From the NCBI GenBank assembly GCA_976226885.1, contig OZ320313.1, positions 52,142,001 to 52,206,000 of the forward strand: DNA of 64,000 bases. Reading direction: 5' to 3'. The stretch comes from Iphione sp. A-MEVVRFRX5 (lineage: Eukaryota). The notes beneath the pieces are model-generated. The model saw only the letters and a list, made by a program, of their open reading frames with translations, was not told the DNA's origin and did not search any database. Below are positions 935-53,400 of the stretch, one piece after another; the stretch's first letter is position 1, and every line of letters begins with the position of its first letter. The position numbers were made by a program, and so were the translations under genes.

Positions 935-1082
935 GGAACCGGTGTGACGCCCGGTATGGTCCCTATGATAAAGAGACCTGCAGTGGCTGACAGTAAAAGT
1001 GGGATTCCCATGTACCAACCGAACACGGGCACTGCCGCCTACCAGCAAGCTCTGGCAGCAGTGCAGTTACAGCAGCCCTTCG
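935..1082 (+). CDS. mbl: Muscleblind-like protein, internal coding exon (KRP / SGIPxYQP / YQQAL...QLQQ region)
   Basis: Acceptor ttttacag|G at 934/935, donor TTCG|gtaagt at 1082/1083, phase 0 to 1. Translates GTGVTPGMVPMIKRPAVADSKSGIPMYQPNTGTAAYQQALAAVQLQQPF, matching the recalled Muscleblind motifs GMVP.KRPA..KSGIPVYQP..TAYQQ (insects) and KRPALEK...YQQALANMQLQQ (vertebrate MBNL). Upstream exons with the N-terminal zinc fingers are outside the window. Confidence 0.93.
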
Positions 1083-1870
1083 GTAAGTTGTCTCCGTCCA
1101 TTGGTTATCGTCCATCTCCCCTCAAGCTTGTGCGCACATATTCCCATGTTTTTCAAATCTGCATTGGTTTCCTTCTTCCGCCATCTCTTCTATGCCAAAT
1201 TATTTTACTGGGTCTCCAGTAGGAACCATTTATTACACTTTTAACATTATAAAGTCCATAAGTGCATCGAAAATGATCGATTTCTTTATTAATTCTGCCT
1301 TGCAACATTGCAGTCCTCTTATAACTATTATTTCACAGTTTTGGAATTGGGAAGATCACCGTTATGTTAATGTTGACATCTCTTTTCCCAGTTTCTGACT
1401 ATGAACTGCAATTCAGTCCGTCAAGATGATTGGTCAAGCTACATATAGATACATGTGTATATATGTATATGTACATATATATGTTTACATGTATGCTATA
1501 TAATGTAATGGAACTGCTTCATTTGAGTCAATTAAACCAAATTTACGCTGGTTAAGTTATTGGTTTGTAAACGTGAAAGGCAATCGCCAGTGCAAACTGC
1601 CCTCTACTTGCTTTCTCGACACAGTTTCCCTGCTAATTGTTGTTGCGAGTGCACATTATGTCAGCTATATAAAGGTGGTACTAAGGAGATCCCTTCTCGA
1701 CAACATCGATATAATGCAGTCTCGCTTCATGGTCACTCACTGCATATGTGTTTCTACTGCCGCTCTATCTAATGGAAAATGCTGAATGGATATTTTGATG
1801 AATACTCTTAAGAGGAACTGTTCAATGATATCCGATACCTATGCATATGTATAGAATTGCACCGGTTTTT

Positions 1871-2013
1871 TCTGACGGTCAAATGTTGATGTTTCTCTTT
1901 TCATGCCTTCTCCTGTCGCTTGTTCCTGGCGCGCACACTCTGCATGCTGTCACTCATGTGCTTTCCAACCATCCAATCGCTGGCCTTGTTTACTGTGTTG
2001 CCATGCCAACCAG
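1871..2013 (+). promoter_or_regulatory. Splicing-regulatory 3' intron end: distant branch point, AG-exclusion zone, YGCY cluster, RBFOX site
   Basis: No AG dinucleotide from 1855 to 2011. CTGAC branch-point consensus with A at 1875, 138 nt upstream of the acceptor, followed by a pyrimidine tract. YGCY at 1904, 1917, 1945, 1959, 1978, 1999, 2004; TGCATG at 1941-1946. Confidence 0.55.
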
Positions 2014-2117
2014 TGTCCCTGATTTCCAACGGCCAAGCGGCAGCCGTCAGCGCAGCCGCCGCCGGTGCCCTGGTCTCCAACGCCACTAGTGTTAATTACT
2101 TTGACGAGGCCAATCAG
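2014..2117 (+). CDS. mbl: Muscleblind-like protein, Ala-rich linker exon (probably alternative; 104 nt, phase 1 to 0)
   Basis: Acceptor ccaaccag|T, donor AATCAG|gtagcg. Joins exon 935-1082 (phase 1) to exon 4077 (phase 0) in frame: (V)SLISNGQAAAVSAAAAGALVSNATSVNYFDEANQ. The Ala-rich composition and terminal ANQ resemble the vertebrate MBNL exon ending ...ATANQ. Confidence 0.85.
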
Positions 2118-4076
2118 GTAGCGGTTTACAAATGAGCTTTGGGCATTTCCTAAGCCTGGCCCGCGACGGATCACAGCCCCTACCGATCTAAGGAGAGATT
2201 CCTTACCACACCCTTTCATGCAAAGTGCTTTCATAGGGAAATAGACCCCATGCCAAATTTCAAGAATGGAGTTTTGGTCGACGGCGATCAATTTCCAGAG
2301 AAACACGTTTTGACATTGAAGAGACCTTTGCCCCCGTTTTCAATGTTATAAGATGGCTACTAAAGATGCGCAGGCTTTCGTAGTAGTTTTGCCAATGTTT
2401 TATGCAGATGTATACGTCCCTTAATGGTGTGGCTAAAACAAGGCGATCCTGACCGAAAGGGCTTAGAAGTGGCTTTTTGTAGGCTTGCTGCTTATATGAA
2501 AGGTACTCCACGACCCCCTTTCCTGTCCTGTTCCTACCTTTAAGTCCAGACCATGTACACTTTTCACCTAGCTGTCAACTTTACCTGGAACGGAAAATTT
2601 GCGTAATGCAGCATTGCATGCAAATTTCAGTCTCTGGATTCATCTTCGTTTTAAAAGGCTCCAAATTATGCAAATGAAACCGCGTGATTTGGGAGTGTGT
2701 ATGGTATGAGGAAAAGGGCTTTGGTCCAATGGTTGAGGTTGCTCTGAGCCAAATTCCAATCCCCCATGGACAAGAGTGTTGCTATTCATACTCCAAAGAA
2801 GCTGAATATAACTGTTGTTCAAACAAGATAGAACTCGGGCTTTATTTGCTCTTGTAATCGTTGTAGGATATTCCCCTTCTGCCCTATACCCTTTGCCCTT
2901 ATCCCAACATTAAGTTTCCGCCAAGGATTGTGAAGTCGTCGGTTCGAAAGGCCGCCAGTAGACTGTTAGATCACCGCAGCTTCGTCGTACCCTAACAGCT
3001 AAGAATTGCAGCTTTTTGGCTGGCTTACATATTTGCAGCAAGCCTTCTCTTCATTTTCCTCTATATCAAGTTATAAGTAGTTTCAATGTAATGTTCAGTG
3101 ATTATCAGAACAAGAATGAATTTCGAATCTTTTCGACATTTTAACCTTGAACGACTGGAAGGAGTGGCTATACTTTAACTCCTGAAAAATTTCTATCGGT
3201 TTTTCTTTTTCAAATAGTGCATGACTTCTGAATTAACATTGACTTTCATCCTCGTAACCAAAAAGTACTTCTCTAGCGTACTCATACCAGTGAACGTATC
3301 ACTTAGACATGACAAAATTAACAAATCACAAAATCAAATTGAAGGGCTCTAATCATATACACAGAAGAGTACATGTCTGCTCCAACTGCATGCATGTGAT
3401 GCTTAAAAACTAAACTGCTTGCCAAAAATCAAACATGAAGCTTTCTTTCTATCGCACTACAAGCTACAATCAATGTCTTACACAGCCTATGCTTCAGCAC
3501 TAACATCCTAGCTCCTACTTTCGCCTTATTCCTTAGTTTCTTCACAGGACGGTTTTGTTTCAGAGGTTTATTCTAAGTTTTAAATGGTATCCTTTTTTCT
3601 ACAAGTGATTGTCCATGTTTTTCAGTAGAAAGACAATTGGGCTAACAGGGACTTCCACTTATGTGCATGGTATTTCAAGTTCATTTTCACACATACATTG
3701 TTCAGGCCTAACATTTTCGGAACACTGCGGAGAAGGAAACAGTGATCAAACATGATATTTACAGGATTCTTCACATTATTTTCAGTTTCACGTAATCGCA
3801 ATATACACCTTGATCCATATAATGCACATTTGGAAATCCTCTTGTACAAATACACGGCCAGTGACGCTAGGTTTGTTTTCTCACCCTGAAGAAATAGTAT
3901 GGTATCTGGGTTTTTCCCGTCACGTCTTAGTATGAAAAGAAACATTTCCTACATTAACGACGCAAATGCACACACTGACACACATGTTAAACAGACATAC
4001 AAGACTGGAAGCAACATACGCCAAGTTTCGCTAGCAGAGAATGACACCTAAGTTGCGGATTTGTTGACCTTTTCAG

Positions 4077-4161
4077 TTGCTGGACACCCTCCCAATTTGC
4101 CGAGATTTTAAATCTGGACAGTGCAAGCGGCCACAATGCAAATATGTTCACCTTGTAGAGG
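4077..4161 (+). CDS. mbl: Muscleblind-like protein, CCCH zinc-finger exon (C-x7-C-x4-C-x3-H); dual reading frame
   Basis: Acceptor cttttcag|T, donor GAGG|gtatgt. Frame 0 reads LLDTLPICRDFKSGQCKRPQCKYVHLVE, similar to the recalled insect Mbl second tandem finger LDTLPVCQDF..C.R..C.FVHL. The phase-1 frame reads VAGHPPNLPRF* (stop 4109-4111). Confidence 0.93.
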
Positions 4162-4937: not shown

Positions 4938-5059
4938 ATTATGTTGAAGTAACGGATGGGAAAGTCACTGTATGTAGGGATGCTGCCAAAGGACGATGCT
5001 CTCGGCCGATGTGCAAATACTACCACATCCCTATGGTACCCCAACTCCTTGTGGGTTAA
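4938..5059 (+). CDS. mbl: Muscleblind-like protein, last coding exon with second CCCH finger and stop
   Basis: Acceptor ctttcag|AT, phase 1 matching the upstream donor. Reads (D)YVEVTDGKVTVCRDAAKGRCSRPMCKYYHIPMVPQLLVG*; V.V.DGKVTVC.D..KGRC.R..CKY.H is the MBNL finger signature. Confidence 0.92.
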
Positions 5060-20889: not shown

Positions 20890-22400
20890 AGGCCCAGTGG
20901 ATTAACTCAAGGGAGCATGCCTCCATCATTGAACAGATTATGGGGAGGAAGGTCTTGACTAGCTGGATTAGTTGTCTGAATGCGGGGAAGGCTCTAGCAA
21001 AGGCTTCCAAGGCCTTTTTGAGCAGGGTGAACAGGTTGAAAGCTTGGGTAGCTTTGCGGTGTTTCCCGGCCTTTGCTGGTTTTAGTGGTTTGGGGTTGCT
21101 GGGGTGGCTGCAGTTGGTGGGTCTGTGGTGGCTGTTGTGGTTGCCTTGGTTCCTCTCTCTGTTGAGGTTTTTGTGTCTGGGTTGGCTTAGTTTGGCTGGT
21201 CTGTGTTGATCATGTGGCAGTTTTCCTGGAAGGGGTCTTGGGTATTCCATTGTGGACTGTTTGTATAGTTGATTTAGTGTGCTGGGGTATCTTTGACATT
21301 TTCCTCCCTTGTATTGGTTGTACAGTCTGTGCTGAGGTAGGTAGGGTAGCACTGAAATCTTCTGCTGTGGGGACTTTCTGGGGGTCTGGGGCCTTGGGAA
21401 GATACTGTTTTTTGCAGGGACTTGAAGATGTTTTTCCTTCTTTGGCAGAACTTGGAAGCAGTGATGTGGTCTCCTTCACAGTTTGCACATTTCCTGTTAA
21501 TCTCCTCTTTCTTCTCTCTCTTCCTCGGGCAGACTGCAGTGGTATATGCATCAGTGCAGATGCAGATTTCTGTTGTCCATTGCATGTCTTAGCAATGTGT
21601 GTGACATGCTGCCACTTGTACCACCTGGTGGGGTCGGGTACATAGATATGGAGCAGAAAACATCCTAATAGTCTGAAGCTCAGGGTGTCAGATGCAGTTG
21701 CTCCAGTCCATGGGAGCTTGACAGATCTGGTTGGGATGGTCTTTTGGGCCTCTGAGTCCAATCTGGTAAGCAGGGGTGGGCACCCAACAAAAAGTTGTCG
21801 CATATTTTAACCTCTGTACGGCAAAAAAATTGCATTCTATTCATTGTATTGATTTTTTTGAAAGGCACAAAACCTCTGTTGTCGCATATTTTAGTGTCCC
21901 TGTCGCACATTTTTTGCGACATAGCGATAGTTGCCCACCTCTGGTAAGCCTCTTGGCTAACGTGATACTGGGGCTGCTCTGTTTCAGTGCCTCATCAGTT
22001 ACATCTAGACTTTCTCTGCCACCAAGATGTGCCTTTCTAGGTTTTGGACATCTCTGTAAAGGTGACAGGTTTCCCAGCAGGTTCAGTCATGCCTCATAGG
22101 GTGAGGAAGGTTTCTTTGTTTTTGAGTCTGAATTTGTGCTGTCTGGTCCACATTTGTGTTCTGCTCACCATCATTGTTGGGTAGCGGTTACTCAGAGCTA
22201 TGAAAATTTCTTGTTCCATCTTCCAGGGGGCCTCAACCTTGGCAATGAAATCTGGGTATCTTTCTGGTTGGAGGTCAGCTTCAGTGTCCATTCCACTGAG
22301 GGAGCTAGCAGAAGACTGCATGCTGGCTTGGCTGCTAGTACTGCGGATTTATGGACTTCTATTTCCTCTTGATAACCCCCATGAAGAGTTTTTCATCCTC
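20890..22400 (-). pseudogene. LINE ORF1 (gag-like) remnant with CCHC knuckles
   Basis: YVPDPTRWYKWQHVTHIAKTC (degenerate CX2CX4HX4C), CICTDAYTTAVC, CANCEGDHITASKFC. Interrupted by the MITE at 21771-21943 and by frameshifts. Confidence 0.8.
21771..21943. mobile_element. MITE (hAT-like termini) inserted into LINE ORF1
   Basis: TIRs caggggtgggcacc and gttgcccacctctg (12/14 match). Flanking duplication gtaag (or ctggtaag sharing the terminal ctg). Removing it restores the ORF1 frame (...TLAKRLTRLD...). Confidence 0.85.
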
Positions 22401-35473: not shown

Positions 35474-35614
35474 NNNNNNNNNNNNNNNNNNNNNNNNNNN
35501 NNNNNNNNNNNNNNNNNNNNNNNNNNNNNNNNNNNNNNNNNNNNNNNNNNNNNNNNNNNNNNNNNNNNNNNNNNNNNNNNNNNNNNNNNNNNNNNNNNNN
35601 NNNNNNNNNNNNNN
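35474..35614. other. Assembly gap (141 N)
   Basis: Run of N characters. Confidence 0.99.
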
Positions 35615-50470: not shown

Positions 50471-53400
50471 TCTCACAGGTTCTCTAGTACGCATGCACTA
50501 TTCTTCATGGCCCGCTTTCCTTATCACTATTCTTCGCTTCCTCCTTCCCTTCAGACAGTATAAGTGTACACAGAGTGGAAGTGAGGCATGGATTTCTCTG
50601 AGTGAGCGTGCGTCTGTCTGCCTCTCACCTCCGATCCCCTTGCCTCGTCCTCTTGCCTACCTCCCTCTGTCTAGCCCACCCAGCAGGCATTAACCACAGG
50701 CAGCCCGCCTGGCGCCCACTGAATCAGACGATCCGACGCGGGCGGTGACATCATCAGCAGGTGCGGCCTGCAGTGGAGGAGAGGACACTATGGCGTCATC
50801 ATAGAGCCTTATTACCAAAGGCGATAGAGATTCTCCGCAGTATCTAAAGATCAGACGTTGCTGTTAAAGAATCACTTTATAATGCATATACCGAAGAGTC
50901 ATTTCATCGTCTTGCTGGGTAAGGAGGGCAGTTCGCTGGGGGGGGGGTTGTTATCATGCTCGTCACTTCCATTCAGAGGATGGTATTCATTGCCAGACTT
51001 CTGGACATTAACGCGGGTCTTTCACTGGTTTGCGATATTTTATCGGTGGCATTCGCCTGACTGGGATAGCTGAATCTAATCTCAAAGCTCGTACAAGTAT
51101 GGTGCTTAGAGTATTCATTAAATTATAACCTAATGAGACTGTCATCAATGATAAGACCGCAGCGTTTGCATGGAGCAACCACCGTGGTAATTTATGTATT
51201 ATTTTCACTTGCTGCACGCTGGATAAACAAGTAACGGCATGGGCGTACTGTAGCTTTCTATCGGAGGATTATACAGTCACTGCCAGGAGTGGGTAACTCG
51301 GCTACAACTCGAAAAGGAGACTGGCTTAAGAGGGCGGCCAACCACCCGCCCGCCGAGCTCGTCTTCCCTTGCCACTAAGGGGCCTCCATGTCAGCGGCCT
51401 AATGCGGGCAGATTAATAGGAGCCCGCGCGCCGTCTGGTTGCGCACCACCTGAGGCCCCACCCCGACGACCAGCCTCCAGTGTTGACTGCAGGTCCTCCG
51501 TCCGACAGCGTTCAGCCTCCAGACACCCCCCTCCCTCTCCTCCGGGCCGCTGTACCACTTGCACCGCGGGTTCTGAAGGTGCTTGACAGTCATTTGGCAA
51601 CCGATCTGTCCACGTAACCGTCCACCTACACGACCCCCCTAAGAGATCCGCCCGTCCACCAATCGGTCTTACAGCTCGACGTTTTCCTTGAGTGCTACCT
51701 TCAGCGTGTGGCATATTCGCAGCCTTTTTTTCATCCTGGTGAGCAGGGATCAGTGGTAGTTGCATCTAACATAGTTTAAGTTAGGCTCATCTATCAATGT
51801 TGTTGTATGGCATCTTCTCCTTGTTCCTGAAGTTTCCAGCCGCGAACGTCCATCTACGGCTACGGAATGCGGGGGACCTCTATTTTTGTTTGTAGCTGCC
51901 TGCAGTCAGGAGGTTCATGCATTGGTGCTAGTGTATATACAGAGGGAAGCTAGATGTATGACGTTTTCATCTTAGTACCTATGTACCGTTATATCTTAGT
52001 GAATTCATCTTTTCCTCACTTTGCAAATTATCGAAATTCCATTCGTCCCTCTTCTCCTGTGATGATCAGGGCAAGCGTCCCTAACACATGAATATTATAA
52101 TGTTGCCCCACATTGCACTTTTTCAATACAGGTGTAACAGAAATTCTTATTTTCGCTGAATTTCAGCCATACTCACCCGAATTTGGAATCAAGCCCGCTG
52201 TAGGGTTGCCTAAACATGGTTACCCTTTGCCGCCATGGTTGTGATGGATGGGATGAGAATTACACTGATTACATATTTGAAAATTGGCCCCCCCTCCACC
52301 GAAGCTCTATTCTGTACGAAGCATTCATGTCATATTATCATAGGTATGAGGCCGTCCGCTCCACACCTAACCAAGGGCATCGTCTGGCGTTCCATGAAGA
52401 GTTTAATCCATCAGGTAATACAATAGTAAGAGATGAATCATACTTCAAGGCCTATCTATTGCCATATATATTTCTATGGCCTGCTCGGATGATCACTATG
52501 ACCTCGGGCGAGCACAAACACAGACCCTCTCCGTGGCATTGCAAATCGAATCCCAGCGCTATCAATCATTTCGAGGGCAAGTGGCCACGCTTTAGATTTG
52601 CTTTACTTGGAAGGTTGGGACGCGGACGGTGGGCGGCGTCGCTAATAGAAAGCATGCCGAAGGGCGGCGCCGACTACCCAGCACACGTCCGCCCCGCCTG
52701 GCCTTCCCTCCTCCTCTTCCCCACACCCAGCGCACCCTTGCCAACATACACACGCGCAGTCAAACACACACACACACACCGACATATACCCGCCGATCGC
52801 ACTTACCCATCCCATGGGGTGATGTATAGACAGGGAGGTGGAGGCGACGCACGCGGAATCCCCGCCACTCCATCATGGCTACGCGCACTTACGTCGCCGC
52901 CATGGTCTCATCCTCTCCTAGTCGGTCCCCCTTACCTTTCATGCTCTCATAATGCATTGCCCTCACTCTCTTCACCATTGACCGTCAACCTACCACTGCC
53001 CTCCGCCGCCGTCTTCTGCGACGGAAAGAGGAACAAACAGCGAAGTGAGGTGACTGCCATCCAGCAGGAGGCAAATCGTCTCTATGGTAAACCTTATAGA
53101 GGCTCCAGAAAACTATGTAGCTACAATGACGTCAACGATTTATGAGAGGCAGTGCACCAGTTGCAGTCTAATAATTTTATGACGAAATCAACTTCAATAA
53201 CTCGCTGGATCATTCATCTATTTGGCAATCAAGAAGTCAAACAGTCCTAAGAGTTAAGGTCAACTACAGGTACATGTAAACAAATGATTGTTGACCCGTA
53301 TCAGAACATTGTATATCAGTCAGACTTTCACTACAAGATGGTCCTGTATGTATTCCATGCTCAGCAGGAAAAAGACTAATACTCTTCATTCTAAAAACTA

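What the first reader, a model, noticed from the sequence alone, without database searches (positions are those of the whole stretch)
4077..4161. Dual-frame muscleblind exon: skipping exon 2014-2117 swaps a zinc-finger pair for a GHPPxxPRF* tail
Seen in sequence: with exon 2014-2117 included, exon 4077 is entered in phase 0 and reads LLDTLPICRDF...(CCCH), leading to two fingers. With it skipped, the phase-1 donor at 1082 gives G+TT GCT GGA CAC CCT CCC AAT TTG CCG AGA TTT TAA = VAGHPPNLPRF* (stop 4109-4111). Recalled knowledge: Drosophila MblC ends ...PYVPVSFTGHPPGVPRF*, and the longer fly isoforms contain LDTLPVCQDF, so these appear to be the same two frames of one exon. Inference: both frames have been under selection across a deep bilaterian distance, forming a conserved switch for the number of RNA-binding domains. 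The early stop is exactly 50 nt upstream of the last junction, at the edge of the 50-55-nt NMD rule, so the short form may be a stable protein rather than an NMD substrate.
Basis: partly seen in the sequence, partly recalled or inferred. Interest (0 to 1): 0.85.

Follow-up and report, generated by a model that had tools for sequence, protein, structure and literature searches.

The report
Ancient two-frame muscleblind exon switch
One exon of the muscleblind splicing-factor gene is read in two frames, either starting an extra zinc-finger pair or ending the protein with a short conserved tail; this overlap is shared by insects, molluscs and this animal, so it is very old, although both protein forms were already known.

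Summary
Exon 4077-4161 reads LLDTLPICRDFK... (a CCCH finger) when the 104-nt exon 2014-2117 is included. When that exon is skipped it reads V-AGHPPNLPRF-stop (4109-4111), 50 nt before the last junction.

No RNA run was listed for this genome, so no junction reads could be examined.
- **Tail is widespread.** [AT]GHPPxx[PQ]RF-COOH ends Mbl proteins of a nemertean, a brachiopod, molluscs and chelicerates.
- **Long form is widespread.** It is annotated in bivalves, a gastropod and over 100 insect isoforms, including Drosophila.
- **Same overlap in other DNA.** It is present in Patella genomic DNA, a close relative's contig, three short-form mRNAs and one insect-like long-form mRNA.
- **Synonymous sites are frozen only in the overlap:** 6/8 versus 2/24 codons (p=0.0008).
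- **The tail is selected on its own.** Two lineages that lost the finger frame keep the tail peptide through synonymous changes.

Corrections:
- These fingers are a third pair, so the switch is 4 versus 6 fingers.
- The overlap is shown for protostomes only. Sea urchins have the finger pair with a different start.
- The NMD remark rests on geometry only.

Both isoform classes and dual-coding exons are known. I found no paper describing this overlap. Other notes of this scan concern the same gene, not this overlap.

The parts
935..1082 (+). Exon encoding the conserved MblC-type segment (...MIKRPAVADSKSGIPMYQPNTGTAAYQQALAAVQLQQPF). It ends in phase 1 with a strong donor, GTAAGT.
   Evidence: A phmmer search with this exon finds 54 Mbl proteins. 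The KRP motif region is described for MblC in PMC2238819.
1854..2013 (+). Conserved intronic block upstream of the cassette. It is YGCY-rich, has a 158-nt AG-free zone and ends in a weak acceptor. It is a likely regulatory region for cassette inclusion.
   Evidence: 81% identical over 303 nt to L002, intron included. It holds 7 YGCY in 160 nt against a window mean of 1.9 (top 2%). Similar features occur in L002 and Patella.
2014..2117 (+). 104-nt frame-switch cassette exon (VSLISNGQ...SVNYFDEANQ) with weak donor GTAGCG.
   Evidence: The homologous cassette is 101 nt in L002 and in Patella, all 2 mod 3. The ..SVNYFDxxxQ end is conserved in bivalve RefSeq long isoforms.
4077..4161 (+). 85-nt dual-frame exon. 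In frame 0 it encodes the first finger of the third CCCH pair.
   Evidence: The orthologous exon is 85 nt in Patella (L001 70937-71021) and in L002.
4077..4111 (+). Doubly coded stretch. In the skipped form it encodes (V)AGHPPNLPRF plus stop TAA at 4109-4111.
   Evidence: Synonymous sites are frozen here only. This is the only stretch with nucleotide similarity to an insect-like mRNA.
4938..5059 (+). Last coding exon: second finger of the pair (DYVEVTDGKVTVCRDAAKGRCSRPMCKYYH...), stop at 5057-5059. In the short form it is 3' UTR.
   Evidence: The junction homologous to 4161^4938 is present in short-form mRNA L006.

Best explanation
This is the 3' part of a muscleblind (Mbl/MBNL) gene, in which one 85-nt exon is coding in two frames.

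**The switch.** A weakly spliced 104-nt cassette (2014-2117, length 2 mod 3) sets the frame.
- Cassette included: exon 4077-4161 and the last exon encode an extra MBNL-type tandem CCCH domain. The product is the long form, with six fingers when ZnF1-4 are present.
- Cassette skipped: the same exon is entered two bases out of register and encodes the conserved C-terminal peptide [AT]GHPPxx[PQ]RF, followed by a stop. The product is the MblC-type short form. Its 3' UTR carries the now untranslated finger sequence.

**Shown:**
- the geometry in the window;
- the existence of both mRNA/protein classes in relatives;
- the same overlap in molluscs, an insect-like transcript and the window's clade;
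- sequence constraint on both frames.

**Inferred:**
- both forms are made in this animal;
- the tail is a short functional motif (partner binding, localisation or stability);
- the extra finger pair changes RNA-binding valency;
- Mbl itself may control the cassette through the YGCY-rich, AG-free intron block upstream;
- the short mRNA escapes EJC-type NMD because its stop is only 50 nt from the last junction.
For: **Geometry.**

**Tail distribution.** The query was exon 935-1081 only, so hits were not selected for the tail.
- 17 spliced hits in that search end in the tail.
- Named examples are Lineus, Lingula, Patella, Rhipicephalus and Mya, Dreissena, Potamilus, Limulus.
- In 31 non-redundant tails, G, R and F are invariant.

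**Long form.** It combines the cassette with LLDTLPxCxDF and a second finger.
- Found in Ruditapes, Mercenaria, Dreissena, Pecten, Argopecten, Saccostrea, Crassostrea/Magallana, Physella and many insects, including Drosophila species.
- The pair is MBNL-type: it matches PDB 5u6h/3d2n (MBNL1 ZnF1/2) at E=6.5e-15.

**DNA.**
- Both frames are present in Patella genomic L001, L002, the short-form mRNAs L006, L007 and L009, and the long-form mRNA L008.
- Synonymous test over 7 sequences: identical codons at invariant degenerate residues are 6/8 in the overlap versus 2/24 outside, p=0.00075. With 4 lineages p=0.007.
- Covariation, for example Dreissena LLDNLP with GQPP, and K with Q. Each species' tail is codon-compatible with its own finger start and mostly not with those of other species.
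- Tail-only transcripts L004 and L005 keep GHPPG[VL]PRF with synonymous changes at 4 and 9 of 10 codons. L005 also uses a different stop codon (TGA). In both, the other frame is no longer a finger.

**Cassette.** Its length is 2 mod 3 in three genomes, with YGCY enrichment upstream.

**Function of the short form.** MblC is functional and rescues fly mutants, as reported in PMC2238819 and PMC13044900.
Against: - No RNA evidence exists from this organism. No RNA run was listed, so the 1082^4077 junction is inferred from relatives.
- The window's exon lacks the usual ...VPV[ST] residues before the tail, so its junction context differs slightly from most orthologues.
- The Patella RefSeq models contain only tail forms, so use of the long form is not documented everywhere.
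- Part of the synonymous constraint could be an RNA-level splicing signal.
- The function of the tail is unknown.
- EJC-dependent NMD is not established for this lineage.
Confidence: 0.8

Rival explanations
1. Skipping the cassette gives a non-productive transcript. This would be a frameshift and early stop used only to lower Mbl output, or splicing noise. The tail would then look conserved only because the finger frame and RNA signals constrain the DNA.
For: - The stop is premature relative to the long ORF and lies upstream of an exon junction.
- The cassette has weak splice sites and a YGCY-rich upstream intron typical of autoregulated exons.
Against: - Lineages without the finger frame keep the tail peptide through synonymous substitutions.
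- Tail-ending proteins were the commonest spliced class in a search not selected for the tail.
- Assembled short-form mRNAs exist.
- Fly MblC is the most active isoform in published rescue assays (PMC2238819).
- The stop is within 50 nt of the last junction.
Confidence: 0.08
2. The frozen synonymous sites at 4077-4111 reflect an RNA element at the 5' end of the exon, such as a splicing enhancer or an Mbl binding site. On this reading there is no selection on a second protein frame in finger-retaining lineages.
For: - The window has UGCU and UGCC (YGCY) motifs inside the overlap.
- Constraint at the starts of alternative exons is common. This rests on general knowledge.
Against: - The YGCY motifs are not conserved: Patella has UGCG and UGCA, and L007 has UGCA.
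- Constraint ends exactly at the alternate-frame stop.
- The variable overlap codons map to the variable tail positions.
- L004 and L005 conserve the peptide, not the nucleotides.
Confidence: 0.1
3. The resemblance between the shifted frame and the MblC tail is a chance resemblance.
For: The peptide is short (10 residues).
Against: - The same overlap occurs in seven further DNA sequences.
- Codon covariation holds within seven taxa.
- Fisher p is 0.0008-0.007.
Confidence: 0.01

Closest known systems
Drosophila muscleblind isoforms: MblC (short, conserved C-terminus) and isoforms with a divergent extra tandem finger (MblF and RefSeq long forms)
   Same: - Same gene family, and the same two C-terminal outcomes.
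- The MblC-specific region with the KRP motif is reported as conserved from nematodes to humans (PMC2238819).
- MblF is cited as having a divergent second tandem finger (PMC3315501).
- Insect long forms carry LLDTLPVCQDFN, whose other frame reads TGHPPGVPRF*.
   Different: - The papers I could read treat these as different C-terminal exons or isoforms. They do not state that the MblC tail and the finger start are two frames of one exon, or that this is shared with spiralians.
- A 2026 review still describes invertebrate Mbl as having one finger pair.
Vertebrate MBNL1/MBNL2 C-terminal dual-coding region (frame shifted by inclusion of a penultimate exon)
   Same: - Same family.
- An upstream alternative exon shifts the frame of a 3' coding exon and gives alternative C-termini.
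- It is listed among dual-coding regions preserved across vertebrates (bioRxiv 10.64898/2026.05.28.727796). It changes protein stability in Mbnl2 (PMC13044900).
   Different: - In vertebrates neither frame encodes a zinc finger, and no GHPP..PRF tail is seen.
- Homology of the two switches was not tested here.
Alternatively spliced dual-coding exons with constraint on both frames (catalogued for human genes)
   Same: - The reading frame is chosen by an upstream splicing event.
- Both frames are conserved.
- Synonymous rates are depressed in the overlap.
   Different: - This overlap is only 33 nt plus the stop.
- It sits at a domain boundary and is shared across protostome phyla. The oldest human cases in that preprint are described as conserved to the ancestor of chordates at least.
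MBNL exon 5-type autoregulated cassette (NLS exon)
   Same: An alternative exon preceded by a YGCY-rich, AG-poor intron stretch.
   Different: - The cassette here is frame-shifting and switches the C-terminal domain content rather than localisation.
- Regulation by Mbl is only suggested by motif counts.

Membership tests
Muscleblind/MBNL gene | Tandem CCCH zinc fingers of the MBNL type | tested here: met
   - The window encodes C-x7-C-x4-C-x3-H and C-x7-C-x4-C-x3-H in consecutive exons.
- The orthologous Ruditapes pair matches MBNL1 ZnF1/2 structures 5u6h/3d2n at E=6.5e-15, and Pfam zf-CCCH_10.
- The window exons align to it.
Muscleblind/MBNL gene | Conserved KRPA...YQQA...QLQQ segment of the MblC-specific region | tested here: met
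   Exon 935-1081 finds 54 Mbl proteins. The motif is described in PMC2238819.
Muscleblind/MBNL gene | N-terminal ZnF1/2 and ZnF3/4 | not testable with these tools
   These lie before the window start according to earlier notes. Orthologues of both isoform classes have them.
Alternatively spliced dual-coding exon with selection on both frames | The same nucleotides are translated in two frames in different mRNAs | tested here: inconclusive
   - Shown in relatives: short-form mRNAs L006, L007 and L009, long-form mRNA L008, and RefSeq isoform pairs in Dreissena and oysters.
- No RNA run was listed for this organism.
Alternatively spliced dual-coding exon with selection on both frames | Frame set by an upstream frame-shifting alternative exon | tested here: met
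   The cassette is 104, 101 and 101 nt in the window, L002 and Patella. All three are 2 mod 3.
Alternatively spliced dual-coding exon with selection on both frames | Evolutionary constraint on both frames | tested here: met
   - Finger frame: conserved from sea urchin to insects.
- Tail frame: frozen synonymous sites (p=0.0008-0.007), covariation, and peptide kept by synonymous changes where the finger frame is lost.
Alternatively spliced dual-coding exon with selection on both frames | Protein-level detection of both products | not testable with these tools
   No proteomics data were available.
mRNA escaping EJC-dependent NMD by the 50-55-nt rule | Stop codon no more than about 50-55 nt upstream of the last exon junction | tested here: met
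   - 4161-4111 = 50 nt.
- The exon is 85 nt in Patella and L002 as well.
- In L006 the stop ends at 1544 and the junction is at 1594.
mRNA escaping EJC-dependent NMD by the 50-55-nt rule | EJC-dependent NMD operates in this organism and the short mRNA is insensitive to it | not testable with these tools
   This needs an experiment. The organism was not identified.

The most novel reading that the evidence does not exclude
The overlap of the MblC tail with the start of a third muscleblind finger pair dates to the protostome ancestor or earlier. This rests on the overlap being shared by spiralians and insects. It would be one of the oldest alternatively spliced dual-coding regions known, older than those catalogued for vertebrates. 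It has not been described as such. The tail would be a functional short motif of its own, and the frame-shifting cassette an Mbl-autoregulated switch of RNA-binding valency.
Probability: 0.5. Interest if true: 0.7.

Novelty: new member of a known kind. Interest (0 to 1): 0.6.

Why it matters
Muscleblind proteins are central splicing regulators and the proteins sequestered in myotonic dystrophy. Invertebrate Mbl is still usually described as having one finger pair.

- **A single ancient event links the isoforms.** Here the 'ancestral' MblC-type isoform and a six-finger isoform are two outputs of one frame-switch. The switch rests on a 33-nt doubly coded stretch kept across protostome phyla.
- **It is a clean natural example of two-frame selection.** The internal control is the set of lineages that lost one frame.
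- **It makes concrete questions testable.** What does the GHPP..PRF tail bind? What does a third finger pair add to target choice? Does Mbl set its own valency?
- **It bears on annotation.** Long forms are missing from some RefSeq models, such as Patella, although the exons are intact.

Tried and rejected
- **RNA evidence.** The look-up of sequencing runs for window:900-5100 listed no run.
- **Orthologous DNA.** The look-up of encoding contigs returned nothing for three RefSeq isoforms that are not the longest product (Lingula, Lineus, Patella X2). It returned no DNA for Diadema because the gene spans 162 kb. The shifted frame in echinoderms is therefore unknown.
- **Organism identity.** The two longest ORFs of the window have no Pfam hit and are not in the protein collection. 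The closest Mbl sequences are unnamed Logan/JGI contigs.
- **Literature.** Searches for the peptide strings found nothing. Searches for frame or isoform descriptions found no statement of the overlap. Subscription papers such as Begemann 1997 and Pascual 2006 could not be read.
- **Extra exon.** I looked for the ...YSPYLEN-type exon seen in some relatives inside 1083-4076 and found none.
- **Exonic YGCY as a cause of the nucleotide conservation.** Rejected as the sole cause, because the motifs are not conserved.

Full report
**1. Observation.**

- Exon 935-1082 ends ...AAVQLQQPF plus one G, before donor GTAAGT.
- Exon 2014-2117 is 104 nt.
- Exon 4077-4161 is 85 nt.
- Including the cassette gives ...SVNYFDEANQ-LLDTLPICRDFKSGQCKRPQCKYVHLVE. 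Exon 4938-5059 follows with a second CCCH finger and a stop at 5057-5059.
- Skipping the cassette gives V-AGHPPNLPRF-TAA, with the stop at 4109-4111, 50 nt before the 4161 junction.

Notes from earlier stages of this scan place a ZnF3/4 exon about 5.9 kb before the window start and an NLS cassette exon 211 nt before it. The fingers in this window are therefore a third pair.

**2. No RNA data for this genome.**

All evidence on usage is comparative.

**3. The tail is a widespread protein C-terminus.**

I ran a phmmer search with exon 935-1081 only, so hits were not selected for the tail. It found 54 proteins among 1.8 billion representatives.
- Seventeen spliced hits end in [IFVL][AT]GH..xx[PQ]RF.
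- Named members are Lineus longissimus, Lingula anatina, Patella vulgata and Rhipicephalus, then Mya, Dreissena, Potamilus and Limulus.
- In 31 non-redundant tails, G2, R9 and F10 are invariant, and H3, P4, P5 and V7 nearly so.

**4. The long form is widespread too.**

A search with the C-terminal part of a Ruditapes isoform found proteins with the cassette (ending ..SVNYFDxxxQ), LLDTLPVCxDFK and a second finger.
- They occur in many bivalves, in Physella and in insects.
- A further search listed 115 insect isoforms, all with LLDTLPVCQDFN, including several Drosophila species.
- Sea urchins also carry the pair, but it starts NETIPVCRDFK and lacks the KRPA segment. The finger pair is therefore older than protostomes.
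- The pair is MBNL-type: its best PDB matches are MBNL1 ZnF1/2, at E=6.5e-15.

**5. The same DNA carries both frames elsewhere.**
- **Patella genomic DNA (L001).** The annotated tail AGHPPSVQRF* overlaps LRDTLPVCRDFKAGQC... in an 85-nt exon. An intact second-finger exon lies downstream and a 101-nt cassette upstream, although RefSeq models only tail forms.
- **L002.** This genomic contig of a close relative has the same layout.
- **Three short-form mRNAs (L006, L007, L009).** Each ends its ORF in the tail and carries the rest of the finger exon, spliced to the second-finger exon, in its 3' UTR. In L006 the junction is homologous to 4161^4938 and lies 50 nt after the stop.
- **An insect-like long-form mRNA (L008).** It reads TGHPPGVPRF** in the shifted frame. 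I did not retrieve D. melanogaster MblC itself.

**6. Selection on both frames.**
- **Codon alignment.** Codons 1-11 are almost identical in nucleotides from the window to the insect-like sequence. Later codons differ freely at third positions.
- **Synonymous test.** I counted residues that are invariant and degenerate, and asked whether the codon is identical in all sequences. The overlap gives 6 of 8. The rest of the two finger exons gives 2 of 24 with seven sequences (Fisher p=0.00075), or 5 of 26 with four lineages (p=0.007).
- **Variable positions match.** The two variable overlap codons correspond to the variable tail positions.
- **Covariation.** Tail and finger residues covary as one DNA requires. 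Dreissena has LLDNLP with GQPP. A finger K goes with a tail Q, and R, Q or L with a tail P. Each species' tail is codon-compatible with its own finger start and mostly not with those of others.
- **Tail-only lineages.** Two transcripts have lost the finger frame: L004 (arthropod-like) and L005 (spiralian-like). They still encode AGHPPGVPRF and TGHPPGLPRF. Their synonymous changes affect 4 and 9 of 10 codons, and L005 uses a TGA stop. That is peptide-level selection independent of the finger.
- **Nucleotide similarity.** BLASTN of the insect-like mRNA against the window matches only 4074-4111.

**7. The switch exon.**
- The cassette is 104, 101 and 101 nt in the window, L002 and Patella. All are 2 mod 3.
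- Its donor is weak (GTAGCG or GTAGAG).
- About 160 nt of upstream intron is as conserved as the exon between the window and L002.
- That stretch holds 7-8 YGCY motifs against a background of about 2.
- It is AG-free for 130-220 nt in the three genomes.

This fits regulation by Mbl itself, but it is only a motif count.

**8. NMD.**

The 50-nt distance is real and conserved, because the exon length is fixed at 85 nt. That length is also required by the finger, so its conservation is not evidence of selection for NMD escape. Whether EJC-type NMD acts here is unknown. Assembled short-form mRNAs with the downstream junction argue that the mRNA is not rapidly destroyed.

**9. Comparison with the literature.**
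- MblC is reported as the most conserved and most active fly isoform, with a conserved region around FKRP (PMC2238819).
- Irion 2012 describes isoforms with ZnF3/4 and cites MblF as having a divergent second tandem finger (PMC3315501).
- A 2026 review still speaks of one pair in invertebrates.
- A 2026 preprint lists a vertebrate-wide dual-coding region in MBNL1 and MBNL2. It concerns other C-terminal exons.
- I found no paper stating that the MblC tail and the finger start are two frames of one exon. Older subscription papers could not be read.

**10. Verdict.**

The finding is real and the reading is essentially right. It is a new, very old member of the known class of alternatively spliced dual-coding exons, in a well-studied gene whose two isoform classes were already annotated.

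The main gaps are:
- RNA and protein evidence in this animal;
- the function of the tail;
- the state of the exon in deuterostomes.

Noticed in passing
window 1854-2013: The intron block upstream of the cassette is 81% identical to L002, as conserved as the exon. It holds 7 YGCY motifs in 160 nt (background 1.9) and is AG-free for 158 nt. Patella shows the same features. It is a likely regulatory element. The scan has a separate note on it (s1-351995).
   Followed up: partly
window 1082^4938 (hypothetical junction); protein P0033: A bivalve-like fragment joins the KRPA exon directly to the second-finger exon (...QYIPVS-Y-YVEVNDGRV...). That would be a third form with only one finger of the pair. 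In the window this double skip (104+85=189 nt) would also be in frame.
   Followed up: no
proteins P0130, P0133-P0145 (Diadema, Strongylocentrotus): Sea urchin Mbl proteins carry the same extra finger pair (NETIPVCRDFKSGSCKRPSCKYAH...DYVEVVDGKVTMCRDAVRGKC...). The pair is therefore not protostome-specific, as the title of note s1-352052 suggests.
   Followed up: partly
L001 68568-68668, 70937-71021, about 72012-72140 (Patella vulgata): The cassette and both finger exons are intact in the genome. The longest RefSeq product (412 aa) nevertheless ends in the tail, so the long isoform appears to be unannotated there.
   Followed up: partly
L001 about 67195-67290; proteins P0037/P0059, P0069, P0070, P0078, P0079: Several lineages insert a further in-frame exon between the KRPA exon and the tail, for example Patella PNFHTTEDQ...YTQNL and others ...YGSYSPYLEN. 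No counterpart was found in the window.
   Followed up: partly
window 35474-35614: A run of 141 N (gap or mask). It was left untouched.
   Followed up: no
window 52216-53145 (+) and 21210-21803 (-): These are the only ORFs of 180 aa or more in the window. They have no Pfam match and are not in the protein collection.
   Followed up: partly
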